From the NCBI RefSeq assembly GCF_004010195.1, contig NC_057721.1, forward strand, positions 44,845,768 through 44,909,767: a stretch of DNA of 64,000 nucleotides, given 5' to 3'. The notes under the pieces were generated by a model, which saw only the letters and a list, made by a program, of their open reading frames with translations, was not told the origin of the DNA and ran no database searches. Made by a program: the position numbers and the translations under genes. Origin of the DNA: Chiloscyllium plagiosum (taxonomy: Eukaryota). Below are positions 5,239 through 45,829 of the stretch, one piece after another. How positions within the stretch are numbered: the first letter of the stretch is position 1; each line of letters starts with the position of its first letter.

Positions 5239-5893
5239 ATAAAACTAAATGAGAAATGGTAAGATTTGTGGGAATGTGTGGTTTCTATTGCAGGTTTGTA
5301 GCAGACCTCAGCAAAATAGCAGCTCTTCGGAATGATTTGCTACAAAAGAATACAAGGTAGTGTGGTCAAAGGAGTGTCAAATAGCTCTTGAGAGTCTAAA
5401 GGTAATTATGATCAATGAATCCATGTAGGCAACCCCTAATTTCATGACACGTCAAGGTAGCAATTGATGCTATGACTTAAAGTAGGTGCAGTTCTGTTAC
5501 AATAAATTGAGTCAAACATAGAGAAGCTAGTGGGATGCTTTTCTAAAAAGCTAAATCAACACTAAAAAAGATACCTGCCAGTGTGTAATGACCAGATATA
5601 AAGGGACGATCAACTTCTCTCTTTATAAGCTCCCTCTTGGTCATTTGCACCAAATATTTTGTATTATAACATCTCCAAGCATGTTGATTAAAATAACTGA
5701 TGAAAATTAGTGTCTTGTCTTTTCTAAACCGCATCCCCTGACACACACACGCACACACGTACTCAAACAATAGTCAAGATTCAGAACTCTGGTGGATATA
5801 GATTTCTATTAGAGATGCACCTCTGTTATTTCTTAATGGATTTCAAGGTGGTCCACAAAAACTAGATAGAAACAGCTTCTCACAACTGGCTCC

Positions 5894-11455: not shown

Positions 11456-11765
11456 TTAACTGCCTTTGAGAAAGCGAATGATATGAAATGATATGAAACG
11501 TTTATTTCTTAAAGACGCACATGTGGTTCCTTTGTAGTTAGCAGTTTGCCTTATGTTTGATGTGGGGCAAATGCTGGCAGTTGAGTAATCCCTGTAGAAT
11601 CGATTATTTTTATCTTTGACCTTTACAACAGTAGATTCTGTTGTCTGGTCCTGCTCTGGTCTTTTCAATTCCTGTTTTTTTTTCCTCTTTGGAAGAGTTT
11701 TGACATGAACAGATGCATAATGAAGAGTTTCACTGCTGAGAGAAATATTATTCTGCAACATATGT
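11456..11765 (-). pseudogene. Putative terminal cytoplasmic exon with an ITIM
   Basis: Strong acceptor tcttatttctctttctcag|, phase 2. Open frame HMLQNNISLSSETLHYASVHVKTLPKRKKKQELKRPEQDQ... LHYASV (11708-11725) matches the ITIM consensus [ILVS]xYxx[LV]. Confidence 0.6.
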
Positions 11766-12479
11766 CTGAGAAAGAGAAATAAGAACACAAGATTAATTAA
11801 AAATAAGTTAATTGGAATTTTAGGTTTGATATTAATTTAGCATGAATCTTGTTTTCCTGTTGTACAATGCAAAGCAACATAGAAATATTAATATTCCAAC
11901 ACATACAGCAAACATCTAAAAACAAGCAAATCAACTGTACATTTCTGACTTTCATGTTTTGACAATAGCCTCTTAAAAATTCTGTCTGTTCTACACTTCA
12001 CTGAAACTATTGGTTGGCATTCAATCAGCCCTCTCCACCATCTCTGGTTCAATTCCCAGGACCCAGCACTGGTAACAAATACAATCCTGCTGGTCCTTAA
12101 TTGCACCTTCATGTTTGTATTGGACAATCAATATCATGTCGCTTAATGACTCATTAAGAACTGTCCACACCTTTGAAAAGGAAAGCTTGTGTTTAAGGAA
12201 TTGTGGGATGCTCTTATGTGGTGCCCAGCTCACTGGATTTCCTACTGTTGCAAGCAGCTTCCTCCTTCTTCTGACTTGAAATGTTAACTCTGTTTCTGTC
12301 TCCACAGACGCTGCCAGACCTACTCAGTTCCTCTCGCGCTGCATTATAATCAATCAGACTTCCAACTAATAAGCAGAACACCAGCTTGCCAAACATAAAC
12401 TGGAGACAAAATTTACCTCATTTATAATCTCTTGCAACTAATTTAGTGTTGGATACTGGATAAAGCATCATCCCATGGT

Positions 12480-13270
12480 ATCATAGAGGTGTACAGCACA
12501 GAAACAAACCCTTCAGTCAAACTCGACCATGCCAACCAGATATCAGAAATTAATCTAGTCCCATTTGCCAGCACTTGGCCCATATCCCTGCAAACCCTTC
12601 TTATTTATATACTCATTCAGATGTCTTGTAAATGTTGTAACTGTACCAGCCTCCACCACTTCCTCTGGCAGTTGATTCCACACACGCACCATGCTCTGCA
12701 TGAAAATGTTGCCCCTTGGGTCCCTTTGAAATCTTTCCTTTCTTACCTTAAACCTAACACCCTCTAGTTTTAGAATCCCCTACCCTGGGAAAGAAAGACC
12801 TGGACTATTCACCTTATCCATGCCCCTAATGATTTTGTAAACTTCTCTAATGTCACCCCTCAGCCTCTGATGCCCCAACATATTCAATCTCTCCCTACAG
12901 CTCAAACCCTCTAATCCTGGCAACATCTTTGTAAATCTTTTCTAAACCCTTTCAAACTCTTTCCTACAGCAGGGAGAACAGATTTGAATGCAGTATTCCA
13001 AAAGTGGCTTAACCAATGTCCTGTACAGCCACAACATATCCTCCTCAATTCCTACACTCAATGCACTGACCAATAAAGGTAAGTGTACCCAAATGCCTTC
13101 TTCACTACCCTGTCTACTTGCAACTCCACTTTCACTTCCAAGGTCTCTTTATTTGGCAACAGTCTCCAGGACTTTACTATTAATAATGTAAATTTGCCCT
13201 AATGAAATGCAGAACCTCAAATTTATCTACCTTAAACTCCATCTGCCAGACCTCAGCCCATGTTCAATCA
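12480..13270 (-). mobile_element. CR1 LINE 3' portion
   Basis: Homologous to 9385-10440. Confidence 0.85.
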
Positions 13271-14326
13271 TCCACACTGGGAAGAAGATTTTAGTTTAAA
13301 TACCCTCATTTTCAGCTGGATGCAATTGAAGCAGTGCGGTTTTACTGAGTATTACTGTCATAAGGGCAGAAAACTGCTTATACTCATGCATATTTAATCA
13401 GTTTTGCCTTAAAGTACATGTGTATATATGTATGTGTACACTTGCCTGATTAAACATTGTCATGATGCCCCCTTTAGTCAACAATATCTTACTTAATTCT
13501 AATGCCTAAACTAATACCTCAAGAAAACTCACATGACATTTACTGTGATTTTTTTTACTATATTTAGATGCAAGTAAATGTCTCCAGGAGTAGTAGAACA
13601 AAAGCTGACTTTTGAAAATTACAGAACTACAAAATGTTGGTTTGTTTATGGTCAAATGTCAACAGTCTTCTTATGGAAATTGAGCCATTAAATAGGCAGG
13701 GCATCAATCTCAGGTATCACTGTGGAAGTACCAATGTGAAACAACATTGTCATTTACCTCAATCATGTGGGGAGCCAAATAAAACAGACTTTTTGAAATC
13801 TAGGATTCATCATTTTACATCCAGAGATAATTATTTGAGAGACTGAGATTCAATCCAAAATGCTAATGCCATTGTTTTCACAGCTGAACACAATTATTTC
13901 AGCTGTTGGTGGATTTCTATCTTTACAATGCTAATGTTTGCTGATTGAAGGTCAGGAATGAATAAGTGACTGTTCTGGAAAAATACGCACCTTTCTCTAT
14001 TTACTCCATCCTATCTCACATTTGTATTTCCTCAAATTGTTGAAAATTGAATTAAAAGTCAATAGGCTGGGTCTTGTTTCAACTTTCAATATGAACTTCA
14101 TAATATAATAAAAAGCATATTAATTTTCCCAATCAGATTTGGTGGTTAATACCAATAGTTCCTGGACAACCTCATCCTGGAAAGTTTGCAATTTATGCGT
14201 GTTTCTTGTCGATGCTAATTAAAACCTAGATTAGACATTGAACTTAATTCACTTGCAGCTAAATCACCAAAATAGCAGTCATCTCAAAAAAATTGTTCAC
14301 ACTCATCAATCATATGACTTAATTGG

Positions 14327-14493
14327 CTTTAGAGAATGTAGGGACTGCAGATGTTGGAGATCAGAGCCAAGATTGTGGTGCTGGAAAAGAACAGCAGGTC
14401 AGTCAGCAGAAACGTATGCCCGAAATGTCGACTCTCTTGCTCCTCAGATGCTGCCTGATCTGCTGTGCTTTTCCAGGACCACACTCTCGACTC
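14327..14493. mobile_element. Inverted Penelope 3'-end mini-element
   Basis: Inverted gtggtgctggaaaag / cttttccaggaccac arms, flanked by the near-direct repeat tgacttaattggc / tgacttcattggc. Confidence 0.75.
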
Positions 14494-14568
14494 TGACTTC
14501 ATTGGCGAAAGAGCATGAAAAGTAGTTGCATAACCAAGGACTTTCTCTCTGGTGAGAGATGTTCTCTC

Positions 14569-14604
14569 ATTCCTGATGAAGGGCTTTTGCCCGAAACGTC
14601 GATT
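14569..14604 (+). ncRNA. Minimal hammerhead ribozyme motif (same family)
   Basis: Identical to the 5894-5929 motif, at the head of a ~135-bp Penelope 3'-end copy. Confidence 0.75.
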
Positions 14605-15959
14605 TTCCTGCTCCTCGGATGCTGCCTGAGCTGCTGTGCTTTTCCAGCACCACTCTAATCTAGACTCTGATCTCCAGCATCTGCAGTCCTCACTTGCGCC
14701 CGAGAGTTATTCTGCCAGTCAACCAGCAGGATGTTCAAAGCTCCATATCAAGGATGCTTACCAATATGACCTGAAGCTTCTAGAATATTGAACCTAGGAA
14801 TCACTAGCTGACAATAGTGGAAAATGGCAATAGCTTCTGTAAGGTGTTGTGATGACCAATGGTTATTACAGCAGTTTGACATCAGACACTAATATTGCAA
14901 AACAACTTCCGATAATATTCAGTTGTGTAATGTGAGACAGGATTCTTAAGAATTGACTTCTTCAGCGATCAGCAAAGGTATGAGCACCCTGAAAAATGAA
15001 TTTGCTTCCTGTACGTTCATCATCTTCCATAGATGGAAGGCTGTCAATGAGAATTTATTCATGGATTATTGTGCTAATGATGGAAGTGATACACTTAGCA
15101 GAGCAATAGTTCAACAAATGTTGCCTTCAGTGTTATCTAAAGGCATGCCATAGAATTAGGGATTTTACTCTTGGCAGTCAAATCTCATTGAAATCAAATC
15201 AAAGATTGCATGATTTTGAAGAAACTTAGCCTAAAAAAAATCTAGATTTTGTTGATTCAACTTTGTAGACCCTGTCTCGAAGATATGCAGCAAAAAATAG
15301 TTTCTGGTTGGGGAAAAGACAGAACAAAAGATAGCCTGCATCTCCTTGGGATAAAGTTACAATAGAGTAGTGGTACCTTCTCATGTACAGTTTCCATGTG
15401 GAAAAAAATAAACCTTCCTGAAGAAAGTTAGCCAAGGCAAAACATTGTTGTATTGACTTAATGAAGTGGAGCATATGAGGAACAAATACCTTTGTCTTAA
15501 CCTTTTACTCATGGAATATGGGCATATTTCAATGTTCATCTCCATCATATATCCGCAACCAATGAGGAAAGGGAAAATAGACAGACTGTGTAGCTAGGAT
15601 ATTATCCTCTATATCCATTTTTTCTTGCTGCATTCCCTACATACCCAGGCAGAAACAAGATCGAATCAAACTGTATGTCAATTTTCATTAAGTTTGATCT
15701 AATTAAGCAAGTGAGGACTTAAATTATATTCTATTTGATTATGGGTATATGTAAAAATACTTTCTCAAAAAGGAAGAATGTCTATATGGCCCAGTCAAGG
15801 CAAGGTCAATGATTTATGGTTTTATTTCTGTTTATATGGCCCAAGCTAATGTACACACAGGGTAACAAATGTGAAAATACTTTGCGATAAGGACCTTTTA
15901 CTGAAGGATACCAATCACAGAGTACAAATTTGACTGAATGCATTGCTTTTATTGAGTAC

Positions 15960-16034
15960 CATTTCTTTTGTGCATATCTTGATAAACTTAAATTCTGTGA
16001 AGCCTGAGAAACTGTCTCATATATCCGATTTGGT
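15960..16034 (-). pseudogene. Putative cytoplasmic exon 1 with a tyrosine motif
   Basis: ttaattacaag|A CCA AAT CGG ATA TAT GAG ACA GTT... = (R)PNRIYETVSQASQNLSLSRYAQKK, 75 nt, phase 2/2. The donor (gtactc) is weak and splicing it to 11765 would create TGA, so the 3' boundary is uncertain. Confidence 0.4.
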
Positions 16035-16759
16035 CTTGTAATTAACAAATATAAGTTAACCTTTTAAATTGGCCCTGTCAATTCGGACTATAATCGCAAT
16101 TAAGGACTCTTATAGCCCCTACTTCTGAGCCAGGAGGCTTTGGTTCAAGTCCCACCTGCTTCAGAGGTGTGCAATAAAATTTCTGAACAGGTTAATTAGG
16201 ATACACATATGATTGCAATTGACACACTTTACAATTAAAGTAAATCTTAAATCTTAGATAAAGACAAAAGATATTCTGCTTCCTTTGTGTTCCCAGTGCA
16301 TCATATTCACAAATAATTTAATTAAAGCTGACAATATTTTATAACAGCTTCAGTTTAGTGCAGCACAGATCACGTAAAGTCAAGGAATATATCAAAACAT
16401 CTACTTGTTACACATTTTGATTTTTCCATAATTTGGTCATCAACATCTTTGCCATGAACTGATGAATCTGTAAATATATCAATATGAAAACAGTCTTATA
16501 GTAAAATATAGTTGTATGTATAAATGAAATCCAACTATAAAAATAGTCTATTACAATGAAATCATGCTCCATTTGGACAATCACTAAGGGTAAGAAATGT
16601 ATATGTCATATGCACTTGCATGAAAAGGAAGAATATCCACATTACCCAGGTCAGTGTAAGGAGAAGAATTTATAGTTTTATAACTATAACACACAGGCTA
16701 ACAAATGTGAAAAGGCAACAAAATGAAGAGCATTTACCAAGGACACTGATAACAGGCAG

Positions 16760-19700
16760 CAAAAAAACACATAAATCCTATCTCTGTTTCCATCCAAGGA
16801 GCCTGGCTTTGGTTTCCCCCAACCGTTTGGAATGTACACATTCTGTGCTTGACACATTGTCACTAGAAAGATGACCCATTGTTCTGATATAGATTCTCCA
16901 TCAGCCTTAGCTTCATTCTTCTGGAAAGATCCCAATGCATTTCAATGAAGGTAGCCCTCTTTCACGTTAGACATTTTCTTACTCTTTTAAATCTTACAGT
17001 TTGAGGATCAAATATAGTCAAATTTTGATCTAGCATTATTCATTTGATATTTGGATGATTAAACTTCCCAAAATCACCACAATTAGTTCTTGCATATTGA
17101 CTGAAAGTCGACAGAAAATTTCCAAGAATGTGAGTATACCTTTCCACTTCCTCAACTCAATGCAAATAGATTCTGTCCTGTTCCTTCAAGGAAACCCTCT
17201 GTCTCCAAGACTAAGATGTCTTCCTGAACCAGTGCCATTGCCTTGCCTCCCTTTCATATATTTTTGAACACTCTTTCTCCTTGAATATTTTGTAGCCAGT
17301 CCTCACAGTTTATAAGCCATGTTTGTTATTGCCAATACATCAAATTCTCACACAGCTTGTGCTTGTAGCTCGTCAATGTTATTGACTAGACTTTGTCTTT
17401 TTAAGTGTGTGCATTCAAAATGTCATTGTATTCCTTGTAGTCCTTCTTAGTCATCTCCTATTCAACATGGGAGCACTTCCTCTCTGGTTCTATGCATCAT
17501 TCTCAGTGAATGTACCTTATGTTGTTCTGCCACTTCTGCATGCTGCTGCCCATTTCCCTGTGAGTTTAATTTAAATCTTCCACAGCCACTGTCATGTGTT
17601 TCTCTGAGAACATTGATCCAGGTACTGGTGAGGTGTGAGCTGCAACTTATTGAAATGGATCTTGTATTTACCCTGTGGCAGATGTTAGACCAATGGGCCT
17701 GTACTCTCTTATTTTCTTTCTCCTTCCTTTCTTGCCAGAGAAGTTTTGTTGACTATTTTTCCAATCTGTTAAGACCTTTCCAGAATCCAGCAAACTTTAC
17801 AAATTAGAATCAATACATCAATTATTTCATCAGCTACTCATTTACCGACCATACCATTCATCACTTCTCATCTTTCAGTTCCGATCGTTTTCTCAGTACC
17901 TTTTTCTTCGTGAACATAATTTCATTTCAACAATTGCATAATTGTTTTAAGTACCTCCCTCTCTTTCAGTTCCTGGTTTTTAAGATGCTATTTGTGTCTT
18001 CTACATTGATTACTTACATAAAATGTTATTTCACACTTCCAATCATTCTTTAGTTCCCACTAATTCCTCATTCTCAACCTCCCAGTGGAACAATGCTTGC
18101 TTTCCTCTTTTCCTTTTCAAATGCTGATAGAAATCTTACAATTTGTTTCTATTTTTCTACTTAGCTTTCTCTCATATTCTAATTTCTCCCATATATTTTA
18201 GTTGTTGTTTGTTTTAGAATTTTATCTCATCTTAGACCATAAAATCATATGCTGGCCTTCATAGTGAGAGGATTTGAGTATATGAGGAAGGATGTCTTGC
18301 TGCAGTTATACAGGGCCTCAGTGAGGCCATGCGTTGAGCATTGTGTGCAGTTTTGGTCCCCTGGTCTTAGGAGGGACATGCTTGCTGTTGAGAGTCCAAC
18401 AAATGGTTCTCAAGACCGATTCCTGGGATGGCAGGACTGACATATGAAGAAGGATTGGATCGACTGGACTTATGCTCGCTGGAATTTAGAAGAATCAGAG
18501 GGCATCTCATAGAAACATATAAAATACTGATGGGACTGGACAGGCTAGATGTGGGAAGAATGTTCCTGATGTTGGGGAAGTCCAGAAGTAGGAGTCACAG
18601 TCTAAGAATAAGGGGTAAGCCATTCAGGATTGAGATGAGGAAGAATATCTTCACTCAGAGAGTTGTGATCCTGTGGAATTTCCTACCATAGAAGGCTGTT
18701 GGGGCCAGTGTATTAGATATTTTCAAGAGGCCCTTGTGGATAAAGGGATCAAAGGGTATGGAGAGAAAGCAGAAATGGGAAACTGAGATTGCATGATCAG
18801 CCATGATCATATTGAATGGTGCTGCAGGGTCGAAGGGCCGAATGGTTGACCCCTGCTCATGTTTTCAATGTTTCTGTGTTTCTATAAGACATAGGTGCAG
18901 GAGTAGGCCATTCAGCCCATTCTATCATTCAACGAGATCACAACTAGTCTGATAATCAAATCCACTATCCTATCTTTCCCCTACAACCCTCAATTCCCTT
19001 ACTAATTAAAAATCTGCCTGTCTCAGTCTTGAATATATTTAGCAACATAGCCTCAACATCCTTCTGTAGCAAATAATTCTATAGTTACACTATTCTCTGA
19101 AGGAAGAAATTGCTCCTCATCTCTGCTTAACTGTATGGTCCTTTATTCTGAGGTTATGCTTTCTGGTCCTACACTCTCCCACAAGGCAAAACAACCTTTT
19201 TTGCATCTACCCTGTTAAGTCTTCTAAGAATCTTGAATGTTTCAATAATGTCAATCTGATTCTTCTATATTCCAGTGGGTACTGGTCCAAACTACTCAGC
19301 CTTGCTTCATAAGACAATCCCTCCATACTTGATATCAGCCTAGTGAAACTTCTCTGAACTGCCCCTAATACCAGTATGTCTTAGATAAGGGACCCAAAAC
19401 TGTTCACAGTATTTCATCTGTGGACTGATGAGTGCGTTGTATCCTTTTAGCAAATCCTCCCTACTTTTATTCCCCATCCCCTTTTACTGGCTGACTGAAT
19501 GCTTTCTTTGTTTTGTAGACGATGACCCTCAAAACCATCTGTTCCATGGCTTTCTACAGTTTTTGTCCATTTAAATATTATTCAGCTCCTCTATTCTTCC
19601 CACCAAAAGGGGATAACCTCACATTTCCCATATTACATTTCATTAATCAACTTTTTCGCCCACTCGCCTATCCGGTCTATGTCCCTCTGAAGACTCTGTG

Positions 19701-20780
19701 TCATCCTCACCACTTGCCTTCCCAACTATATTTGTGTCTCAAGCAAACTTGGCTTTAGTCCAATCACTTTCTTCATCCAAAGCACTAACATGTATTGTAA
19801 ATAATTCTGGACCTAACACTAATCTTTGTAGAATAGTGCACTTTTTCCTTCAAGTTAACACTATCTTGAACTTCCTTAGCTATCCACAGATTGTGCATTC
19901 CTCTCCTAGATTCTCTCTTACTAGAATGTATCTTTGCTAATAATGATGAAATTATCTCATTAAATGTCTGCCACTGCATGTCTATTGTCCTATTCCATAA
20001 CATTATTTCTCAACTCACTTTGGGTAGTACTGCGTTCATACCCTTATCAATGACCTTTATTTAAGTTTCAAACATTAATCTTCAACCCACTCTTCTCCTC
20101 CTCAAAATGAAGGCAAAATATGATCATGTTTTGACTTTGTTTTCCTGGAGCCTTCTTCACGATGAGAACAGTCTTGTCATTCCACCTTATGAGTTCTGGA
20201 ATGACATCTCTCTCTAGTTGACTGTAGAAGATTTAAGAATCTGTCCTGAAAACATTACATGAACAGATTCCATGCTACCTTTGTAATTTAAATCATCTTT
20301 GATTTATCTCCATATCCTTTGCAAAATTCCCCATTATTTATTCCTGTATATTCTAACAGTTTAGTTACCATGTGCAGACCTACAAATACTCCCACAAGGC
20401 ACATCTTACATTTACTGTCTATTATTTCTGCCAAAACTGCACCTTGATCTTTAGTACAAATGTTATCTTTTACTGTGTACTAAATTCGTTTTTAATTAAC
20501 ACAGCTACCTCAACACCTTTTCCAAGCTTCCTATCCTTTTGAAGTATCATGAAGCTTTTAATATATAGGTCCTAGTCTTGCTCATGCTGTGGTCGTATCT
20601 CTGTAATAGCTATCAAGTCATACATATTTATTCCTATATGACATAACAATTCATCCATTTTGTTACGAATGCATTCAGATACCATTGTTTTTACTATTAT
20701 TTGTTGATGCAATCTGAAATTTTAAGCTCTATCCCTTCCTGCCTCACTGATTATCATTACCCATGTTGGTACCTCGTACT
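16760..20780. mobile_element. Nest of old CR1 fragments with a younger plus-strand CR1 3' end at about 18240-18885
   Basis: MLAFIVRGFEY...LLQLYRASVRP and GLTYEEGLDRL...LIETYKIL on plus; decayed endonuclease/RT pieces on minus. Confidence 0.75.
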
Positions 20781-20787
20781 ATTGCCT

Positions 20788-22570
20788 TAGAACATAGACG
20801 TGTACAACACAGGAACGGACCCTTCAGCCCATGATGTTGTGCCAAATATGACTCCAAATCAAACCAATTCCTTTTGCCTATCTTTGGTCCATGTCCCTTG
20901 CATAATCATGTATTTATCTAAAAGACCCTTAAATGTCCATAACGTGTCTGTGTCCACCACCCTTGGCAGGGCGTTCCACACTCCTACCACTCTCTGTGCA
21001 AAATCTTGACCCTCATATCTCCTTTGAACCTACCCCCCCTCACCTTAAATGCATGCCCCCTTGTATTAGATATTTAAACTCTGAAAAAAAGTTTCTGACA
21101 ATGAACCCTATCTATGCATTCCATAATTTTATAGACTTCTATCAAGTCTCCACTCAGCCTCCACCCCTCCAGAGAAAACAACCTGCGTTTTTCTAGCCTC
21201 TCCTTATAACTCATACCCTCTAATCCAGGCAGTATCCTAGTAAACCTCTTCTGCACCCTCTACACAATCTCCACATCCTTCTTGTAATGTGGCAACCAGA
21301 ATTGAACAACTGAATTACTCCAAGTGTGACCTAACCAACATCTTATAAAGCTGCAACATGACATCCTGACTCTTGTATCAATTCCCCAACCAATAAAGGC
21401 AAGCATGCCATACACCTTCTTTACCATCCTATCTACTCACGTGGCCACTTTCAGGGCTTGAACCCCAAGACTGTTCTGTACATCAATACTGTTCGGAGTC
21501 CTGACATTAACTGTATACTTTTCCTTAACATTTGACCTCCCAAAGTGTAGCCTATTACACTTACCCAAGTTAAATTCCACCTGCTATTTCTCTGCCCATT
21601 TTTACAACTGATCTATATCCTGCCTTATCCTTTGACAACCTTCTACATTATTCATAACTACACTGATCTTTGTCTCATTTGCAAACTTACTAACCCACCC
21701 ATCTACATTTTCATCCAAGTAATTTAAACCCATCACAAACAGCAGAGGTGCCAGTATGGATCCCTGCGAAACACCCCTGTTATGGACTAGGTCATTCTTA
21801 AGCAGGCAGCCCAGACCGCAACTTTGCTATTTGTTTTGGTAAGGGTACAGTGAAAATTATCCAGAGTAGGTTAGCTAGGTTGACTACCAGATTTTAAAAA
21901 CAGACAAAAATTTATTCACAAAATTACATAATGAAACACAAAGAAATGAAACGGAAAGAACAACATAGAATACTCACAGAACTCAGTCTGTCCAAAATAG
22001 ACTTAATTATACTGTTCTGAAAATATACAACAGTCCCAAGAAACAAACCCCTTAATCACAGAGTAAAAATGAAACAGAGGCTTACAGGTCAAAGTTAGAA
22101 GGGCAGAGGAGGGAGAAAGAGGTTTCTGGCCTTCTTCCATACAGCTTCTGCTGCAACTGACTAAAACAAGAATTCAGCTTTCAGGACTGACCACTCTCCT
22201 TTCATTATACAGGTTACTTCTAAAACATAAAAGCCTTAGCCTAAAGTCTCATCTGTTTGCATACAAACAGAAAGCCTCTCAGTAAACACTTTGATCTCTG
22301 TACCACTTCAGCCTATTCTGAGCCTGGGCTGTTTTATGACCCGTCTGATAAAAATCAAGGACACAATATCCTTGAGAAAAAGGACCAGCTTTGTGACACA
22401 ACTAGGCACGGACCTTCAGCAAGAAAAACACCCTTCCATCACTACCTTCTGCCTTCTATGGCCAATTCCCCATTCTGAATTCATGTGGCCAAGTCAGCGT
22501 GCATCCCAGTCATCCTAATCTTCTGGATGAGCTTACCATGAGAGACCTTGTCGAAAGCCTCGCTAAAGCC
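20788..22570 (-). mobile_element. CR1 LINE 3' portion (contains a solo LTR)
   Basis: QKRFTRILPGLEGMSYKERL...GDLIEVYKIM. Confidence 0.85.
21778..22398 (-). mobile_element. Solo LTR in a CR1
   Basis: TGT...ACA termini. Reverse-complement homologue of 37416-38049. Confidence 0.85.
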
Positions 22571-23465
22571 TTGTCCTTTCCCTTATATTTACCACATCTC
22601 CCACCATTTGATCTGTCTTCCCCCCCCCCCCCCCCACTATTTGGCTCCACTGCTCCAGTTATACAACTCATCACTTGTAATAGTCTTAATGCTGACCTGC
22701 ATTTTCAATTTTTCCCTACTCTTTCAGATGGCTAACTATCTGTAATCCTGAACTCTTACTGTCTGTGGAATATGAATTTTTCTAATAGTTATTTTTATTA
22801 GAATTATGTCATGCAGCATTTATACATTGTTTTCAATGCAATGCATTTAGTTCAGCCAAAAAAGAAGATTGCATTCTATTCCAAATACTTTTTCCATTCT
22901 TCAGTTTATGGCATTCACTCCTAATGATCCAAAGACAAAATGGTACAATAAGGAGAAGACTCATTAGACCAAAGTATTAATAACTGGAAAAATCTTCAAA
23001 TTGCAACTGGAACATCAATCAAACCATTAGTAATAATTCATTATATGTGATCAAGAATTGATACATTACGTTCAATAATTTAAAATTCAGATCTTCAGAT
23101 ATATTCTTTAAACTGCATATTAAATCTGAAATATATTTACTCACTGTCACTGGAATTTTTTAATTGACTTGTTGTGTGAAATGTATGAGTAGAACACCAT
23201 GAAAGACTAATATTAAAAATACTTCAATTTGTGTAATTGAACTTTATATGCATTATCCTATTTCTACTAAAATTTTCCAAACAAGTGCAGTAGCTATTTA
23301 ATGGTTGAAGGACTAATTCCACGCCATCATTGAGGCTTTATCATAATGGTTATATTATTCATGAGTGGTTTTGTCACTGCCTGAAGGGAAGTCACACCTC
23401 ACTGTATCGGCGTATTGAATCGCGTTACTGAGATATATAGTATTACCACTTTCAATCGAATATCA

Positions 23466-24499
23466 TCCTTTAACTATATTGCAAAAATAGCTGGGCACAA
23501 CACCCTAAGAGATAACCTTAAAATATTTTCAGTTTGCACCAAATAACTACAGATATTTAAAAATAACTTCAAAACCTAAGCCATCCTGCTGTGTTTCTAT
23601 TCTCTGAATCCTTTATGTTCAGTAACAAGTTCACTACAGCCAGATAGTGATAAGCAAATTATCCATGTACATTTAAATGCAGAAAACCAATGTACTGCCA
23701 GCCTCTTACTGAACTCACACCTCCATTTTTGCTGCAGTTACAAAGGCTTGAAATGGGCAATGTAACTTGAACTCCTTACTCAAATTACTGGCGATTGGAA
23801 AGTTAATTTATAATGTGCCTTCATGATTGTCCTTCCCTCATCCAACACGTTTGTCTAAATTCAGGTGTCCTGTCATTAATGGTACCTTTCAAAAATGATG
23901 TGTGTTATTTCTGGTTTACAATGCATACATGATGGCTATCAATGTTGCAAGCTGACGGTTATTATTATAAATTGCCAGTTCTGGTTCAAAAAGAAAACAA
24001 ACCAGTTCACCTACATTGGAGATTGCCAGGGTAATTGTCATCTAATTTGAAAGTTAGAACTGGAGACTGCCAGGACCAATATTGTTGAAAATAAATCTCA
24101 TGCCTTCAGCATTCACACCTATCTTCTGCAATTTTCAAATCACCCCTGTTGCTGTATATTTGCAACTGATGGACAGAGCTACAGATTGTTATGACAAGCC
24201 ACTTCCTATCCAACACAGTCTAGCACCTTAAATTCATAAATAGGTGACACATATGTCCGACTATCATTTACCTGCTTTTCTGTTGGTCAGCCTTTTCTTT
24301 GGTCTGGCAGCATAAAATAACATTTTTTAACAAGATTGGTTTCAAACTGCATACTATGGAGACAGAAACCATTCAGGCAGCCTCCGAGAGGAAATAGTTT
24401 GCCACAGCCCATATTAATACATTTTATAATTCCTCCCTTCCAAACTCCTACTCCCAATAGGGTGTTGTGCACAGCTATTTTTGCAATATAGTTAAAGGA
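23466..24499. repeat. 42-bp inverted repeat pair (1 mismatch)
   Basis: 23466-23507 is the reverse complement of 24458-24499. Confidence 0.92.
24272..24383 (-). pseudogene. Putative transmembrane exon of the same receptor (degenerate)
   Basis: Reads (E)AA*MVSVSIVCSLKPILLKNVILCCQTKEKADQQKS(R) and ends AG|gtaaat. The 112-nt phase 1/phase 2 exon fits the V exon upstream and the exon at 16034 downstream. The acceptor reads tttcctctcgg (AG apparently mutated to GG) and there is an in-frame TGA at 24373-24375. Confidence 0.5.
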
Positions 24500-24504
24500 G
24501 CTAT

Positions 24505-24690
24505 AGTCCTGCTCTCTCATTAAAGAGATATGGCTGGTGGTAGATTAGCCTGAGGAGTCACCATGCATCATATGAGGGCAGAAGTTGTGAAAGTGGGAAT
24601 TCCTGGTAACCACAGCTGGTGTGTGAATTGAACCTGTGCTGTTGGTGTTCCTCTCCATCAGAGGCTGGCCAACTTAACTAACCAGCCCCC
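24505..24690 (-). mobile_element. Second tRNA-derived SINE family (related copies near 54260-54452 and 63105-63251)
   Basis: Three diverged copies share ctctcatta.agaga...tttaacctgagggtcaccac...gttgagaag...ctaactgacccc. A B-box-like gaattgaacc is present. Confidence 0.55.
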
Positions 24691-26184
24691 AATTGCTGAC
24701 TGCAGTGACTCACTATTAGGTGAGGACACCTCACTACTACCTTCTCAAGGGCAATTCAGGATGAACAATAAATGCTGATCAAACCAGCAAAGTCCACATC
24801 CCAAGCAATAAAACCCCAGAGAAGGCTGGAAATAATTGGCAGCATCTGCGGAGAGGGACCTCTCACTTTCCAGATAACTCTCCTTAGTGTTCTGATGAAA
24901 GGTCACCACCTGCACTGTTGGACTCCCTTTCCACAGAAGTTACCTGATCTTCATTGCCAGCATTTTCTACATTCATATCAGATTTCCAGCATTTTGGTTC
25001 TGGAGTGGTGCATTCTGTAGTCTGCTGAGCGAGGATGACACTGCTGCCTTGGTGTACACCAAAAGCACATTGTGCCACAACCAACTAGTGCCAGTCTATG
25101 GCTAGGTCTTATTACTTGTAACTTTGGTTAGATGATCAACGGGGGGTGGGGGAGTGAGGACTGCAGATGCTCAGGATGTGGCTATTCAGCTGATGATATT
25201 TTAGCCTCAGGGCTTTTGCCCAAAATGTTGATTTTCCTGCTCCTTGGATGCTACCTGACCTGCTATGCTTTTCCAGCACCACTCTAATCTTGACTCTGAT
25301 CTCCAGCATCTGCAGTACCCACTTTCACCTACTGTAGTCTCACAGTCTGACACTTCTGATCATCACAGAGACTTATTATTCAGTCTGTGGATATGCCACT
25401 CACACCATTTGTTTAATCTTTTGATCTCTCCGTGCTGTGCGCTTCTCTTCACCTGAGCAAGGGACAGCGCTCTGAAAGCTTGTGACTTCAAATAAACTGG
25501 CTGGACTATAACCTGTGTGACTTCTAACCTGTGGCTAGGCCCGGCACACTCATTCTCCAATAGTTTTAAGTTGGTCATGAATTCCCTGTTCCAAGCTTCT
25601 GCCTGATGTGCAAATCCAATGCGCTGACCCTCACTGGAATTTGGCTCATAACGGTTTTCAAAGATGCTGGCAGATCAACACAACNNNNNNNNNNNNNNNN
25701 NNNNNNNNNNNNNNNNNNNNNNNNNNNNNNNNNNNNNNNNNNNNNNNNNNNNNNNNNNNNNNNNNNNNNNNNNNNNNNNNNNNNNNNNNNNNNNNNNNNN
25801 NNNNNNNNNNNNNNNNNNNNNNNNNNNNNNNNNNNNNNNNNNNNNNNNNNNNNNNNNNNNNNNNNNNNNNNNNNNNNNNNNNNNNNNNNNNNNNNNNNNN
25901 NNNNNNNNNNNNNNNNNNNNNNNNNNNNNNNNNNNNNNNNNNNNNNNNNNNNNNNNNNNNNNNNNNNNNNNNNNNNNNNNNNNNNNNNNNNNNNNNNNNN
26001 NNNNNNNNNNNNNNNNNNNNNNNNNNNNNNNNNNNNNNNNNNNNNNNNNNNNNNNNNNNNNNNNNNNNNNNNNNNNNNNNNNNNNNNNNNNNNNNNNNNN
26101 NNNNNNNNNNNNNNNNNNNNNNNNNNNNNNNNNNNNNNNNNNNNNNNNNNNNNNNNNNNNNNNNNNNNNNNNNNNNNNNNNNNN

Positions 26185-27400
26185 ACAAAGCCATGTTAAC
26201 TATCCCTAATCAGTCCTTGCCTTTCCAAATACATGTAAATTCTGTCCCTCAGGATTCCCTTCAACAATTTGCCCATGACCAATGTCATCCTCACTGGCCT
26301 ATAGTTTCCTGGCTTTTCCTTAGCACCTTTCTTAAACAATGGCACCAGGTTAGCTAATGTCCAGTCTTTCTGCACCTCACCTGTGACTATCAATAATACA
26401 AATATATCAAAAAGGTGCCCAGCAATCACTTCCCTAGCTTCCCACGTTGTTCAATGGTACACCTGATCATGTCCTGGGGATTTATCCACTTTTATGCATT
26501 TTAAGACATCCAGCACCTCATCCTCTGTGATATGGACATTTTTCAAGATGTCACCATCTATTTCCCTGCATTCTATATCTTCCATGTCCTTTTCTCTATT
26601 TCCCTGCATTCTATATCTTCCATGTCCTTTTCCACAGTAAACACTGATGCTAAATACTCATTTAGTATCTACCCCATCTCCACACATAGGCTGTCTTGCT
26701 GATCTTTGAGGGGTGAAAATGTGTTGCTGGAAAAGCGCAGCAGGTCAGGCAACATCCAAGGAACAAGAGAATCGATGTTTCGGGAATGAGCCTGCCCGAA
26801 ACGTGGATTCACCTGCTCCTTGGATGCTGCCTGACCTGCTGCACTTTTCCAGCAACACATTTTTCTGATCTCCAGCATCTGCAGTCCTCACTTTCTCCTC
26901 GATGATCTTTGAGGGGCCCTATTCTCTTCCTAGTTACCCTTTTGTCCTTAACGTATTTATAAAATCCCTTTGCATTCTCCTTAACCCTATTTGCCAAAGC
27001 TATCTCATGTCCTCTTTTTGCCTTCCTGATTTCCCTCTTAAGTATATTTCTCCTGCCTCTGTACTTTTCTGAGAATTCATTTGATTGCTGTTGTCTACAC
27101 CTGACATATGCTTTCTTCTTCTTGACCAAAACCTCCATTTCTTTAGTCATCTAGCATTCCCTATACCTACCAGCCTTGCCTTTTACCCAAGCAGGAACAA
27201 TTTGTCTCTGGACTCTCCTTATCTCATTTTTGAAGGCTTCCCATTTTCCAGCCATCACTTTACCTGAGACCATCCGCACTCTATCAACTTTTAAAAGTTT
27301 TGGCTGAATACCATCAAAAATGGCCTCCCCCCAAATTAGACCATCAACTTTTACATCTTGTCTATGCTTTTCTATCACTATTTTTAGACTAATAGAACTA
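26185..27400 (-). mobile_element. CR1 LINE ORF2 fragment
   Basis: DWTLANLVPLFKKGAKEKPGNYRPV and KENAKGFYKYVKDKR. Contains a 38-bp tandem duplication (26557-26632). Confidence 0.88.
26714..26902. mobile_element. Inverted (head-to-head) Penelope 3'-end mini-element with a 14-bp TSD
   Basis: Inverted arms tgttgctggaaaagcgcagcaggtcaggc / gcctgacctgctgcacttttccagcaaca. TSD TGATCTTTGAGGGG at 26700-26713 and 26903-26916. Inserted into a CR1. Confidence 0.85.
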
Positions 27401-27668
27401 TGAGCGGTTTTCTTCAAGCTAAGTGTTGAAAAGGATGGGACTGAAAGGATCTGATAGAAAAGCAGGTGCTGCTGGTGGGTGGTTAATGTGAGATTAAAGG
27501 TAAACCCCGGGCAGACCCTGTGCTCCCACACAACATCCCAGTCTGGGCTCTATCTCTGTGATTCTAAGCACTGTTTCTGTTTCCTTCTCTCACACATTGA
27601 GTTATTTCACTCTCCCTTCATCTTCTCAGAGAAAGCTCACTGCACAGAACCAGGCCATTTGGCCCATC

Positions 27669-27857
27669 GTGGCGAAAGTGAGGACTGCAGATGCTGGAGG
27701 TCAGAGTCAAGATTAGAGTGGTGCTGGAAAAACACATCAGGTCAGGCTGGAGCTTCAGTGAAGGGCTGCTGAAGGGCTTTTGCCCGAAACGTCGATTCTC
27801 CTGCTCCTCGGATGCTGCCAGACTTGCTGTGCTTTTCCAGCACCACTCTCACCTTGA
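27669..27857. mobile_element. Inverted Penelope 3'-end mini-element with a 13-bp TSD
   Basis: TSD CATTTGGCCCATC at 27656-27668 and 27858-27870. The hammerhead core is mutated to CTGCTGA. Confidence 0.85.
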
Positions 27858-28235
27858 CATTTGGCCCATCATGTCCTTATTTGGAAACTCTGAGAAATGT
27901 TTCTCTTCAGAATGTTGTCCCATTCTCTTTTGAAATTCATGATGAAATCTATCTCTGTCCCAGTCCGAGGCAGGGCGGGTAAAACCGAGCCCATATGTGG
28001 CCTCTATTTCTGAGGATATTCAGTGTAACTCTGTACCGCTTGGTTTGGAAGATGGGGATAGACTCTCCCTGTCTATTCTGTTCAGACACTGCATCAGCAG
28101 CAAAACATCGCGGATTCTGGGAACACTCAGCAGGTCAGGCTGTCTCTGGGCATGGCTCAGATAAACGACTTTGATAAACTCTTCAACCATTTAACCTCCA
28201 ACTTCTTCCAGTTCTGACCAACCTGAGCCATGACC

Positions 28236-28269
<34 letters not shown>

Positions 28270-28313
28270 GATGCAGCCCTTCCTGCTGAATATTTCGGAT
28301 CTTCCACAATTAC

Positions 28314-28966
28314 CTTGGATGTTCAATGTTGTTCCATTTCCCTGGAAGTATATTAGATTACTTACAGTAGTGGAAACAGGCCCTTCGGCCCAACAAGTCC
28401 ACACTGCCCCGCCGAAGCGCAACCCACCCATACCCCTGCATTTACCCCTTACCTAACACTACGGGCAATTTAGCATGGCCAATTCACCTGACCTGCACAT
28501 CTTTGGACTGTGGGAGGAAACCGGAGCACCCGGAGGAAACCCACGCAGACACGGGGAGAACGTGCAAACTCCACACAGTCAGTCGCCTGAGGTGGGAATT
28601 GAACCCAGGTCTCTGGCACTGTGAGGCAGCAGTGCTAACCACTGTGCCACCGTGCCACAAGTCCACTGTGCCAGGGCCGAAGTCTCTCTCTGAGAACCAC
28701 ACAGCAGTAAGTGTCAGAATCATTTACCATCAGCTCCCGGATAATGAGGAAACTCTCTGACACTGACACACGGGAGCTGTTTTCCAGGAAATTCCAGGAT
28801 CTGTTTCCGCTGAAGTCAGGATTGTCTCTTGCCCGACACCAATAATATCTCACCAGCTCTGCCCGCTCCTCTCCTGGTATCAGGCTGCAGTTGATCCGAG
28901 CTGTCTGCCCTCTCAGGAGGGAGAGAACTGGAGGAGACTCAATCACTTTCAGAGTGACAACAGGCC
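28314..28966 (-). pseudogene. Disrupted single-exon VJ-type Ig V domain (NKp30/NCR3-like), split by a SINE and frameshifted
   Basis: LKVIESPPVLSLLRGQTARINCS...VRYYW...FLIIRELMVNDSDTYCC contains the B-strand Cys, C-strand Trp and DxxxYxC motif. Removing the SINE (28350-28658) and correcting the frame in the GA run (28683-28692) gives ...DFGPGTVDFQGNGTTLNIQ G|gtaatt, a J-like GxGT G strand with a phase-1 donor at 28313. There is no MYPPPY, so it is not CD28/CTLA4. Confidence 0.85.
28350..28658 (-). mobile_element. HE1-type V-SINE inserted into the VJ exon
   Basis: tRNA-like head GGCACGGTGGCACAGTGGTTAGCACTGCTGCCTCACAG, V-SINE core (GGAGTTTGCACGTTCTCCCCGTGTCTGCGTGGGTTTCCTCCGGGTGCTCCGG) and a TAATC-type tail. 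Possible 4-bp TSD (plus-strand AAGT at 28346-28349 and 28659-28662). Confidence 0.92.
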
Positions 28967-29061
28967 CTGGAACATAATGTGACAACAAATGGGAACATCA
29001 ACTCCACAGAGCCCGAGTCTAACTGCAATGACTGCTCCCTGGAACCAAAGGCAAGCCTTAC

Positions 29062-29098
29062 CTAAGAGGAAGAGCCAGAGCCTGAGAACTGAGCCCAT
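29062..29098 (-). pseudogene. Leader (signal peptide) exon of a VJ-type IgSF receptor gene (NKp30/NCR3-like)
   Basis: Minus strand reads aagaacATG GGC TCA GTT CTC AGG CTC TGG CTC TTC CTC TTA G|gtaagg = MGSVLRLWLFLL(G). Good Kozak context, hydrophobic peptide and a phase-1 donor. A 95-nt intron ending ttccag| joins in frame to the V exon (GPVVTLKVIESPP). Confidence 0.85.
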
Positions 29099-29124: not shown

Positions 29125-31018
29125 TTTTTTTATTTCAAAAATATACTTTATTCATAAAATACTTTGATGATCTGTACAACTGGACATGCCATGCATATGT
29201 AAACATTCCATTTCTTTGCATACCGAAAACAGAGTAATCATTCCTATTTACAGATCTGTGCAATTACATTGAGCTGAGGCGTCAGCAGAGCCCGAATGAC
29301 TGCGCGGGCCCCCTGTTCTTCGTTAGGCAGGCAGATGTTACACGGTGGTCTTTCCCCACCGCGCCTTGGCAGCAGCTGCCCCAAGCTTCAGCGCGTCCCT
29401 CAACACGTAGTCCTGGACCTTGAAATGTGCCAGTCTGCAACACTCAGTCGGGGGTCAACTCCTTCAGCTGGAAGATCAGCAGGTTTCGGAGCACCCAGAG
29501 AGCGTCCTTCACCGAGGTGATGATCCTCCAGGCATAGTTGATGTTCGTCTTGGTGTGCGTCCCGGGGAACAGGCCGTAGAGCACGGAGTCCCGCGTCACG
29601 CGCTGCTCGGGACGAACCTCGACAAACACCATTGCATTCCTTTCCAGACTTCCTCTGCATAGACACATTCCAGAAGGAGGTGTGTGACAGTCTAGTCCCC
29701 CCCCGCAGCTGCTTCGAGGGCAGCATGTGGTGCGGCTGAGAGTCCGGGCCTGCATAAAGGATCTCACAGGCAGAGCCCTTCTCACCACCAGCCAAGCCAT
29801 GTCTTGGTGCTTGTTGGAAAGTTCTGGCGATGAGGCATTCTGCCAAATGGCTTTGACGGTCTGCTCAGGGAACCGCTCGATAGGATCCACCCTCTCCTTT
29901 TCCCGAAGGGTCTCAAGGACACTACGTGCTGACCACTTCCTAATGGACCTGTGGCCAAAGGTGATTTTCTTCATAAGTTTCTCCACGAAGGACAGGTGNN
30001 NNNNNNNNNNNNNNNNNNNNNNNNNNNNNNNNNNNNNNNNNNNNNNNNNNNNNNNNNNNNNNNNNNNNNNNNNNNNNNNNNNNNNNNNNNNNNNNNNNNN
30101 NNNNNNNNNNNNNNNNNNNNNNNNNNNNNNNNNNNNNNNNNNNNNNNNNNNNNNNNNNNNNNNNNNNNNNNNNNNNNNNNNNNNNNNNNNNNNNNNNNNN
30201 NNNNNNNNNNNNNNNNNNNNNNNNNNNNNNNNNNNNNNNNNNNNNNNNNNNNNNNNNNNNNNNNNNNNNNNNNNNNNNNNNNNNNNNNNNNNNNNNNNNN
30301 NNNNNNNNNNNNNNNNNNNNNNNNNNNNNNNNNNNNNNNNNNNNNNNNNNNNNNNNNNNNNNNNNNNNNNNNNNNNNNNNNNNNNNNNNNNNNNNNNNNN
30401 NNNNNNNNNNNNNNNNNNNNNNNNNNNNNNNNNNNNNNNNNNNNNNNNNNNNNNNNNNNNNNNNNNNNNNNNNNNNNNNNNNNNNNNNNNNNNNNNNNNN
30501 NNNNNNNNNNNNNNNNNNNNNNNNNNNNNNNNNNNNNNNNNNNNNNNNNNNNNNTCAGGCTCGCATCCTTTCTGATGGACTCGGCAAATGGCTCTATGCA
30601 GCACACAAACAAGGCAGGAGAGAGAGGGCAGCCCTGTCTGACTCCAGATCTGACTGGGAAGCTATCTTGATTCCCACCCATTGATTGAGACTGCACTGAC
30701 AATGTTGGTGTAGAGCAGTCTGATCCAATTGCAGATTTCCTCCCCAAATCCCATTTTGGAAAGAACATCTCTCATATACCTGTGTGATATCCTGTCAAAG
30801 GCTTTCTCCTGGTCCAGGCTGATCAGGCAGGTGTCCAACCCTCTGTCCTGCACGTAGGCGATCGTATCCCTGAGGAGTGCGAGACTCTCAGCGAACTTCC
30901 TGCTCGCTACCGCACAGGTTTGGTCAGGATGAATCACCAACCCCAGAGCAGACCTGACCCGGTTGGCGATTACCTTTGACAGAATTTTGTAATCCGCATT
31001 CAACAGTGAGATTGGTTA
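29125..31018 (-). mobile_element. 5'-truncated Tx1 LINE with a 10-bp TSD
   Basis: RT motifs (NADYKILSK, ISLDQEKAFDRISH, GVRQGCPLSP), C-terminal Cys-rich region, AATAAA and an A-tail. TSD CTGTCTCACT at 29115-29124 and 31019-31028. Contains an assembly gap. Confidence 0.92.
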
Positions 31019-45820: not shown

Positions 45821-45829
45821 TCCCTGGTT

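What the first reader, a model, noticed from the sequence alone, without database searches (positions are those of the whole stretch)
11456..29098. Hidden shark NKp30/NCR3-like VJ receptor gene with an ITIM-bearing tail
Seen: a leader exon, a V exon carrying its own J-like strand (QGNGTTLNIQ), a TM-like exon and two cytoplasmic exons, all on the minus strand with mutually compatible phases (1,1,2,2). Established: non-rearranging single-exon VJ domains ending in GNGT characterise NKp30/NCR3 and CD28 relatives and are regarded as resembling the pre-RAG ancestor of antigen receptors. Mammalian NKp30 is activating and has a short tail, and shark NCR3 genes form a divergent MHC-linked family. Inferred: this is an inhibitory or dual-signalling member of such a family. 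No single ORF reveals it because TEs break it up. Linkage of the 3' exons to this V exon is inference.
Basis: partly seen in the sequence, partly recalled or inferred. Interest (0 to 1): 0.85.

Follow-up and report, generated by a model that had tools for sequence, protein, structure and literature searches.

The report
Dead copy of shark VJ-C1 receptor
This is a broken duplicate of a shark immune-receptor gene whose intact relatives carry an antibody-like V domain, one constant domain and an inhibitory tail, so it is a decayed family member, not a hidden working NKp30 gene.

Summary
The leader, V exon, J-like strand and ITIM-bearing last exon are real. Exon by exon they match an elasmobranch receptor family. 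The best match is the epaulette-shark protein P0030: leader 11/12, V 88/98, J strand 12/12, tail 68/82.

The stretch read as DFGPGTVD is out of frame. The true frame reads RERLRPW, matching REKPRPW in P0030, so no frameshift repair is needed. The true TM exon is at 22889-22993, not at about 24361.

Intact relatives are VJ + C1-set domain + TM + ITIM/ITSM-like tail. RefSeq names them SIRP-alpha/beta-like. No hit carries an NCR3 receptor name.

This copy looks dead:
- a ~310-nt SINE splits the V exon, and the frame stops 11 codons into the insert;
- a TAA stop lies in the TM exon;
- no C1 exon was found with any of 18 queries (it may lie in the N gap);
- the family-invariant ITSM-like tyrosine and a shark-conserved C-terminal tyrosine are replaced;
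- the usual stop codon is lost.

The gap is intronic, so linkage of the two halves stays an inference.

Other unchecked notes of this scan report intact genes of this architecture elsewhere in the genome.

Verdict: an unprocessed pseudogene of a predicted family, of modest interest.

The parts
29062..29098 (-). Leader exon (MGSVLRLWLFLL + first base of a split Gly codon), phase 1, donor GTAAGG at 29061
   Evidence: 11 of 12 residues identical to P0030.
28659..28966 (-). V exon, 5' part: PVVTLKV...DSDTYCCVVLRERLRPW, then 12 nt (HSGL) with no counterpart in homologues; acceptor TTCCAG at 28967
   Evidence: Pfam V-set 30.8 bits; 88 of 98 residues identical to P0030. Across leader, V and J strand together, 0 of 25 family-invariant columns are changed.
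28351..28658 (-). SINE-like insertion of about 308-320 nt in the FG/CDR3-like loop. The V frame runs into it and stops at TAG 28637-28635. Short ACTT repeats flank it (28663-28660 and 28349-28346). Boundaries are good to a few bases.
   Evidence: 82.6% identity over 321 nt to 56029-56344, plus five other copies. Searches show the head and tail junctions.
28314..28350 (-). End of the V exon: J-like G strand YFQGNGTTLNIQ + G, phase 1, donor GTAATT at 28313
   Evidence: 12 of 12 residues identical to P0030 and P0036.
26187..26531 (-). LINE ORF fragment (just upstream of the RT domain) reading into the assembly gap; intronic
   Evidence: two tblastx matches to the LINE at 44400-46200, whose ORF scores RVT_1 at 1.6e-22.
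25685..26184 (.). Assembly gap (500 N) inside the V-to-TM intron. It may or may not hide the C1 exon.
   Evidence: It was not filled.
22889..22993 (-). True TM exon (105 nt, phase 1 to 1): (D)FSSY*YFGLMSLLLIVPFCLWIIRSECHKLKNGK, with an in-frame TAA at 22979-22977. Acceptor ..TTTGAAG, donor GTATTT.
   Evidence: 25 of 34 residues identical to P0030. 11 of 11 homologues with this TM type hit here.
16412..16467 (-). Cytoplasmic exon 1: (N)SSVHGKDVDDQIMEKSKC. Acceptor TTTACAG, donor GTAACA (phase 0).
   Evidence: 15 of 18 residues identical to P0030. E = 4.4e-06 (P0030) and 0.001 (P0032).
11456..11752 (-). Last exon. ITIM LHYASV kept (11708-11725). TEY becomes TES (Ser codon 11635-11633). TTY becomes TTC (Cys codon 11521-11519). 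The ORF runs 15 codons past the point where shark homologues stop.
   Evidence: 68 of 82 residues identical to P0030. 4 of 10 invariant tail columns are changed, among them Y319S.

Best explanation
The locus is an unprocessed (intron-bearing) pseudogene. It is a decayed duplicate of an elasmobranch gene family that encodes type I receptors.

Architecture of the intact family:
- a split leader;
- a germline-joined VJ V-set domain;
- one C1-set domain (two in some rays);
- an uncharged TM;
- a tail with an ITIM (LHYASV type), an ITSM-like TEYAVL motif and, in sharks, a C-terminal TTYASL motif.

How intact members probably work (inferred): they bind an unknown ligand through the V domain. After tyrosine phosphorylation they recruit SH2 phosphatases, as SIRP-alpha does.

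Why the window's copy cannot make that protein:
- a SINE sits in the FG loop of the V exon and ends the frame;
- the TM exon has a nonsense codon;
- no C1 exon is found in the read letters;
- the invariant ITSM-like tyrosine and the shark-conserved C-terminal tyrosine are replaced;
- the normal stop codon is lost.

Shown: homology of each exon, the lesions as assembled, and the family architecture. Inferred: the signalling mechanism, that the V half and the 3' half are one gene, and that the lesions are not assembly errors.
For: - Exon-by-exon matches to P0030: leader 11/12, V 88/98, J 12/12, TM 25/34, cyt 1 15/18, tail 68/82. All lie on the minus strand in gene order.
- Family: 15 proteins from sharks and rays, with V-set plus C1-set.
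- SINE. The stop inside it is seen.
- TAA at 22979-22977, where P0030, P0029, P0026 and P0027 have Tyr.
- C1: 0 of 18 C1-bearing queries hit the window with their C1 part at E <= 0.05.
- Decay is uneven. 0 of 25 family-invariant columns are changed in leader + V + J. 5 of 18 are changed in TM + cyt + tail, among them the Tyr of TEY, which is Tyr in 10 of 10 homologues.
- Canonical splice sites are retained, so this is a duplicate and not a retrocopy.
Against: - A single-base TAA and the tail changes could be assembly errors.
- The C1 exon may lie in the gap.
- The V exon is well kept (90% identity, no invariant residue changed), so the decay may be recent, or the V exon may still be used in some way.
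- A weak donor (CTT|GTGGCA) and the acceptor CTTCCAG| could in principle splice the SINE out in frame. This was not tested.
- The two halves are joined only across an N gap.
Confidence: 0.85

Rival explanations
1. One reading: a working, hidden NKp30/NCR3-like V-only receptor (leader-V-TM-tail) with an inhibitory tail, missed only because TEs interrupt the ORFs.
For: - V to TM is phase 1 to phase 1, so a V-only product would be in frame.
- Frog relatives are V-TM with a three-tyrosine-motif tail and no C1. They are homologous over V, TM and tail (hhalign probability 99.2%, E = 1.1e-19).
- The GNGT strand is present.
Against: - A SINE lies inside the coding V exon and a TAA in the TM exon.
- Intact shark relatives all carry C1.
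- No protein named as the NCR3 receptor is among the hits, and no NKp30 chain is among the rows shown in the PDB searches.
Confidence: 0.04
2. A functional VJ-C1 family member that only looks broken. The C1 exon sits in the gap, the TAA and tail changes are assembly errors, and the SINE is removed by splicing (intronised).
For: - The V exon keeps 25 of 25 invariant residues (counted over leader + V + J) and all splice sites.
- The gap length is unknown.
- A phase-0 GT (CTT|GTGGCA) and a phase-0 AG (CTTCCAG|GGA) flank the insert.
Against: - It needs several independent rescues at once.
- 5 of 18 invariant TM/tail columns are changed and the stop codon is lost, which fits relaxed constraint.
- The flank of the gap is LINE sequence, not exon.
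Confidence: 0.07
3. Two separate gene relics brought together by scaffolding: a V-bearing 5' fragment and a TM/tail-bearing 3' fragment of different copies, joined across the N gap.
For: - Continuity across 25685-26184 cannot be shown. The LINE ORF that enters the gap does not come out on the other side.
- The two halves differ in decay.
- Other notes of the scan report several genes of this type in the genome (unchecked).
Against: - Same strand, correct order, one copy of each exon, and similar kinship to the same best homologue, P0030.
- A second leader/V or tail set is not present in the window.
Confidence: 0.1

Closest known systems
Predicted elasmobranch 'SIRP-alpha-like / SIRP-beta-1-like / Ig kappa light chain-like' proteins (for example Hemiscyllium ocellatum P0030, Scyliorhinus canicula XP_038658211.1 = P0001)
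   Same: Every exon found in the window matches them, at 74-100% identity to P0030. They share the split leader, the VJ exon, the TM motif LIVPFCLWII and the tail motifs.
   Different: The window's copy is broken: SINE, TAA, no C1 exon found, two tyrosines replaced. It is only 87-90% identical in V to the nearest protein, so it is a separate, older duplicate or an orthologue in a related species.
SIRP-alpha / SIRP family
   Same: - N-terminal V-set followed directly by C1-set, then a TM and an ITIM tail that recruits SHP-1/2 (SIRP features from passages of PMC12975943).
- The family profile matches SIRP-alpha chain 2wng over V + C1 in one stretch (E = 2e-31), and SIRP-gamma 4i2x.
- Rays have short-tailed forms with a basic residue in another TM (P0024, P0037), like the paired alpha/beta forms.
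   Different: - One C1 instead of two in sharks.
- The V-only profile ranks Ig light chains, TCR V-alpha and VNAR first, and no SIRP V is among the 60 rows shown.
- Orthology was not tested and CD47 binding is unknown.
UrIg2 / UrIg (non-rearranging shark VJ-C genes; Sci Adv 2025, PMC12227049, outline and section 7 read)
   Same: Split leader, single-exon VJ, C1-type domain next to V. UrIg2 V-C1-C2-C3 (9dmx) is the best PDB match of the family profile (2.9e-34).
   Different: - UrIg2 has nine to eleven C domains; this family has one.
- Section 7 describes a TM/cytoplasmic domain for UrIg2, and the words ITIM and SIRP do not occur in the paper's main text.
- The paper's UrIg2 accessions differ from this family's. 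For catshark it lists XP_038644097.1, against XP_038658211.1 here.
NKp30 / NCR3
   Same: A non-rearranging V domain with a J-like strand in one exon. Frog relatives of this family are V-only.
   Different: - NKp30 has one IgV domain, a TM arginine and no signalling motif of its own (passages of PMC6514059). This family has C1, an uncharged TM and an ITIM/ITSM-like tail.
- No sequence link to NKp30 was seen.
PRARP (chicken non-rearranging VJ IgSF genes, Fu et al. 2019)
   Same: Named in PMC10751288 as a VJ gene of the MHC (passage). From recall only: VJ + C domain + TM + an inhibitory-type tail.
   Different: Not tested. The paper is not held, and no PRARP sequence was available from any tool.

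Membership tests
Elasmobranch VJ-C1-TM-ITIM/ITSM receptor family (RefSeq 'SIRP-like') | Split leader + single-exon VJ V-set domain homologous to the family | tested here: met
   V 88/98 and J 12/12 identical to P0030. 0 of 25 invariant columns changed (leader + V + J).
Elasmobranch VJ-C1-TM-ITIM/ITSM receptor family (RefSeq 'SIRP-like') | C1-set domain exon between V and TM | tested here: inconclusive
   0 of 18 C1-bearing queries hit the window with their C1 part. A 500-N gap lies in that intron.
Elasmobranch VJ-C1-TM-ITIM/ITSM receptor family (RefSeq 'SIRP-like') | Family-type TM exon and tail exon with ITIM + ITSM-like motifs | tested here: met
   Both exons are present and homologous. As a working gene it fails: TAA in the TM exon, and only the ITIM is kept.
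NKp30 / NCR3 | A single IgV domain as the whole ectodomain (no C domain) | tested here: not met
   The intact relatives have C1-set (48.3 bits in P0030; alignment). For this broken copy alone the point is open.
NKp30 / NCR3 | V-domain sequence kinship to NKp30/NCR3 | tested here: not met
   Of 22 hits at E <= 1e-3, 19 carry a source name and none is named as the NCR3 receptor. NKp30 is absent from the 60 rows shown. No tree with shark NCR3 could be built.
NKp30 / NCR3 | Charged TM residue and no own signalling motif (mammalian form); MHC linkage; B7H6 binding | not testable with these tools
   The TM here is uncharged and the tail has an ITIM. The window holds no MHC gene, and MHC notes of the scan are on other pieces. 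Binding needs the bench.
SIRP family | V-set + two C1-set domains, ITIM tail (alpha) or basic TM residue (beta) | tested here: inconclusive
   Sharks have one C1; Mobula and Hypanus have two (P0028, P0025). ITIM tail and short-tailed basic-TM forms are present. SIRP-alpha matches at 2e-31 over V + C1. Orthology was not tested.
UrIg / UrIg2 | VJ followed by several C domains (UrIg2: nine to eleven); the accessions given in the paper | tested here: not met
   One C1 only, and different accessions.
Rearranging Ig/TCR V segment | V exon ending in a recombination signal, with J encoded apart | tested here: not met
   The J-like strand ends the same exon, with a donor right after it. The CACAGTG next to the break belongs to the SINE head. 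Homologues have V and J contiguous.

The most novel reading that the evidence does not exclude
The family behind this dead copy may be an undescribed, ancient lineage of non-rearranging VJ(-C1) receptors that signal through their own ITIM + ITSM-like tail.

- It is present in sharks, rays, sturgeon and paddlefish (P0016, P0052) and, with or without C1, in frogs (P0051; P0007, P0021, P0041).
- It appears distinct from NCR3, SIRP, UrIg and UrIg2.
- Its V profile lies closer to Ig light chain, TCR V-alpha and VNAR than to any SIRP or NKp30 chain shown.

If so, it is a further surviving relative of the pre-RAG antigen-receptor precursor. The window's copy, with V spliceable straight to TM, would illustrate how loss of C1 yields NKp30-like V-only receptors through birth-and-death evolution.
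Probability: 0.3. Interest if true: 0.6.

Novelty: new member of a known kind. Interest (0 to 1): 0.25.

Why it matters
The locus itself matters little. It is one more decayed duplicate in a multigene immune-receptor family, and its relatives are already in RefSeq as predicted proteins.

It has two uses:
- It points to the intact family, a germline VJ + C1 receptor with an inhibitory tail found from sharks to frogs. I did not find this family described in the searched literature. Automatic annotation names it inconsistently: SIRP-like, Ig kappa-like, Ig heavy chain Mem5-like, NCR3-ligand-like.

Such genes bear on which non-rearranging VJ-C1 genes survive from before the RAG transposon. That question should be asked of the intact copies, not of this one.

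Tried and rejected
It is out of frame with the V domain, and the in-frame reading matches the homologues.
A stop stands before it and it has no homologue.
- Rearranging V segment: rejected.
- UrIg2 identity: rejected.
- Structure route: AlphaFold2 on the seven-sequence V alignment gave a mean pLDDT of 60.9. That is too poor, so no fold search was run.
- ESM Atlas: only generic V-set clusters ('putative antigen receptor', CD22-like, nectin). These are leads only.
- Literature: the PRARP search returned 106 unrelated papers and then only one citing paper. UrIg 2023 and Flajnik 2012 are not held. I did not see Kinlein 2021 on the shark NCR3 family, so what I say of it is recall.
- Supplementary files were not opened. 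Fig. S1 and table S1 of PMC12227049 may list further VJ-C genes.
- MHC synteny was not testable. 54 ORFs of at least 90 aa were listed. Of the 10 ORFs scanned, the only Pfam hits were reverse-transcriptase families (2 RVT_1, 1 zf-RVT below its cut-off).
- Exact TSD of the SINE: unresolved. Only ACTT is shared, and 12 nt (CACAGTGGACTT) before the SINE head are unexplained.
- The cyt 1 to last-exon joint could not be set against an intact gene's DNA.
- The third homology search was cut to 8000 candidates.

Full report
WHAT IS THERE

On the minus strand an ATG at 29098 opens a 37-nt leader exon (MGSVLRLWLFLL + G) that ends at a GTAAGG donor. A 95-nt intron later, a TTCCAG acceptor opens a V exon at 28966. 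The translated exon passes Pfam's V-set threshold (30.8 bits, cut-off 26).

The V frame reads ...DSDTYCCVVLRERLRPWHSGL and then runs into a SINE-like repeat. The repeat spans about 28658-28351. It is 82.6% identical over 321 nt to the copy at 56029-56344, and five more copies lie in the window (junctions). The frame stops at TAG 28637-28635.

Right after the SINE tail the exon resumes as YFQGNGTTLNIQ + G and ends at a GTAATT donor in phase 1.

THE GAP

The N run 25685-26184 lies in the intron after the V exon, and no exon letters touch it. The flank on the V side is the start of a LINE ORF that reads into the gap. The far flank does not continue that ORF. Continuity therefore cannot be shown.

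The tie between the V half and the 3' half rests on strand, order, single copy number and shared kinship.

WHAT IT BELONGS TO

An HMMER scan of 1.84 billion representative proteins with the 94-residue V piece gave 22 proteins at E <= 1e-3 and 6 at E <= 1e-10. The best was a catshark protein at 1.1e-30 and 70% identity.

A word-indexed search with that protein gave 15 shark and ray proteins. RefSeq names them 'tyrosine-protein phosphatase non-receptor type substrate 1-like' (that is, SIRP-alpha-like), 'signal-regulatory protein beta-1-like', 'immunoglobulin kappa light chain-like' or 'Ig heavy chain Mem5-like'.

Their common architecture is as follows:
- leader;
- VJ V-set domain;
- one C1-set domain (48.3 bits in P0030; two copies in Mobula and Hypanus);
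- a TM of the ..LIVPFCLWII.. type;
- a tail with LHYASV (ITIM pattern), TEYAVL (ITSM-like) and, in sharks, a terminal TTYASL.

The ITIM and ITSM consensus patterns are recalled, not taken from a call.

The epaulette-shark protein P0030 is the nearest relative.

| Exon | Window position | Identical to P0030 |
|---|---|---|
| Leader | 29098-29063 | 11/12 |
| V | 28964-28671 | 88/98 |
| J strand | 28350-28315 | 12/12 |
| TM | 22991-22890 | 25/34 |
| Cytoplasmic exon 1 | 16465-16412 | 15/18 |
| Last exon | 11752-11507 | 68/82 |

All 10 homologues that carry the tail hit the last exon. All 11 that carry this TM type hit 22.9 kb.

It is preceded by a stop and matches nothing.
In frame, RERLRPW aligns with REKPRPW of P0030. 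The frameshift in the GA run, also noted in s1-886261, is not needed.

WHY IT IS A PSEUDOGENE

1. The SINE splits the V exon between the RPW codons and the G strand and ends the frame.
2. TAA at 22979-22977 replaces a Tyr codon of the TM exon.
3. None of 18 C1-bearing queries finds a C1 exon in the window at E <= 0.05. It may still lie in the gap.
4. The Tyr of TEY, which is Tyr in 10 of 10 homologues, is Ser. The terminal TTY Tyr, which is Tyr in 5 of 5 sharks, is Cys. The ORF runs 15 codons past the usual stop.

Invariant family columns are untouched in leader + V + J (0 of 25) but changed in 5 of 18 columns of TM + cyt + tail. Splice sites are canonical, so this is an unprocessed duplicate.

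I could not check the lesions against reads:
- The look-up of sequencing runs found DNA holders from two or more studies and no true RNA holder.

PHASES

Leader to V is phase 1. V to next exon is phase 1. The TM exon is 105 nt, phase 1 to 1. It matches the 34 residues that the TM-less isoforms P0032 and P0033 lack relative to their TM-bearing counterparts (P0031, P0027), which is consistent with one skipped exon.

For cytoplasmic exon 1 to the last exon, the only canonical in-frame joint is phase 0 (TGT|GTAACA ... TTGCAG|AAT). It gives one residue fewer than P0030. I could not confirm it.

NKp30, SIRP OR SOMETHING ELSE?

- The family profile's best PDB matches are UrIg2 V-C1-C2-C3 (2.9e-34), an IgA1 heavy chain and SIRP-alpha (2e-31, V + C1 in one stretch).
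- The V-only profile ranks Ig light chains (from 4.5e-15), TCR V-alpha (2e-10) and shark VNAR (4e-10) first. Neither NKp30 nor a SIRP V domain is among the 60 rows shown of 5123.
- Of the 22 first hits, 19 carry a source name and none is named as the NCR3 receptor.
- NKp30 is a single IgV with a TM arginine and no signalling motif of its own (passages of PMC6514059).
- SIRPs are V + two C1, with an ITIM tail (alpha) or a DAP12-binding TM (beta) (passages of PMC12975943).
- UrIg2 has nine to eleven C domains and other accessions (section 7 and passages of PMC12227049).

The family therefore works like SIRP-alpha: a V-C1 ectodomain and an ITIM tail. Rays also have short-tailed forms with a basic TM residue, P0024 and P0037. 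Membership in SIRP, NCR3 or UrIg is not established.

RELATIVES OUTSIDE ELASMOBRANCHS

- Paddlefish and sturgeon have VJ-C1-TM-ITIM proteins (P0016, P0052).
- A frog V-C1 form exists (P0051).
- A frog V-TM family with three tyrosine motifs aligns with the shark family over V, TM and tail while skipping C1 (hhalign probability 99.2%, E = 1.1e-19).

LITERATURE

With the searches I found no paper describing this family. PRARP (Fu et al. 2019) and the shark NCR3 family paper could not be read, so overlap with them is open.

CONTEXT

Of the 10 other ORFs scanned in the window, the only Pfam hits were reverse-transcriptase families. MHC linkage could not be tested. Other unchecked notes of this scan report four apparently intact VJ-C1-ITIM/ITSM genes in this genome, one of them 9.5 kb beyond the window's start. 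That fits a multigene family with birth-and-death turnover.

VERDICT

The locus is a pseudogenised member of a predicted VJ-C1 inhibitory receptor family. Its own interest is low. The intact family deserves the phylogenetic and synteny tests listed under next steps.

Noticed in passing
window 56029-56344, 5039-5239, 41464-41798, 1408-1702, 4608-4762, 57346-57414: Six further full or partial copies of the SINE family that splits the V exon, at 69-91% identity to it.
   Followed up: partly
window 14624-14700, 25254-25329, 50428-50498, 26829-26904, 14334-14402, 52097-52164, 27671-27747: A dispersed unit of about 75 nt, found on both strands at 81-92% identity. It translates to the recurring CRCWRSE.. 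ORF pieces. At least seven copies, several of them in this gene's introns.
   Followed up: partly
window 44866-45651, 30662-31003, 36744-37304: LINE remains: RVT_1 at 1.6e-22 and 1.4e-10, and zf-RVT at 24.6 bits (below its cut-off of 27.5). The 29999-30554 gap interrupts one of them.
   Followed up: partly
window 28240-28275: A (GA)n microsatellite about 40 nt downstream of the V-exon donor.
   Followed up: no
P0030 residues 249-325 (homologue, not the window): The cytoplasmic tail gives a near-threshold Pfam match to DUF4578 (25.6 bits, cut-off 27). Meaning unknown.
   Followed up: no
P0024 (Pristis) and P0037 (Hemitrygon), homologues: Ray forms have the same V-C1 but a different TM holding a basic residue, and a short tail without tyrosine motifs. 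They may be activating partners of the ITIM forms, as in paired receptors.
   Followed up: no
P0007, P0021, P0041, P0046, P0048 (frogs); P0051 (frog V-C1); P0016, P0052 (paddlefish, sturgeon): Homologous receptors outside elasmobranchs. The frog V-TM forms carry three tyrosine motifs and align with the shark family over V, TM and tail. Most are unnamed or inconsistently named in RefSeq.
   Followed up: partly
runs of organisms B and C: Two other organisms hold about 45% of the sampled words of the V-exon stretch. The locus, or its SINE, is therefore shared with relatives.
   Followed up: no
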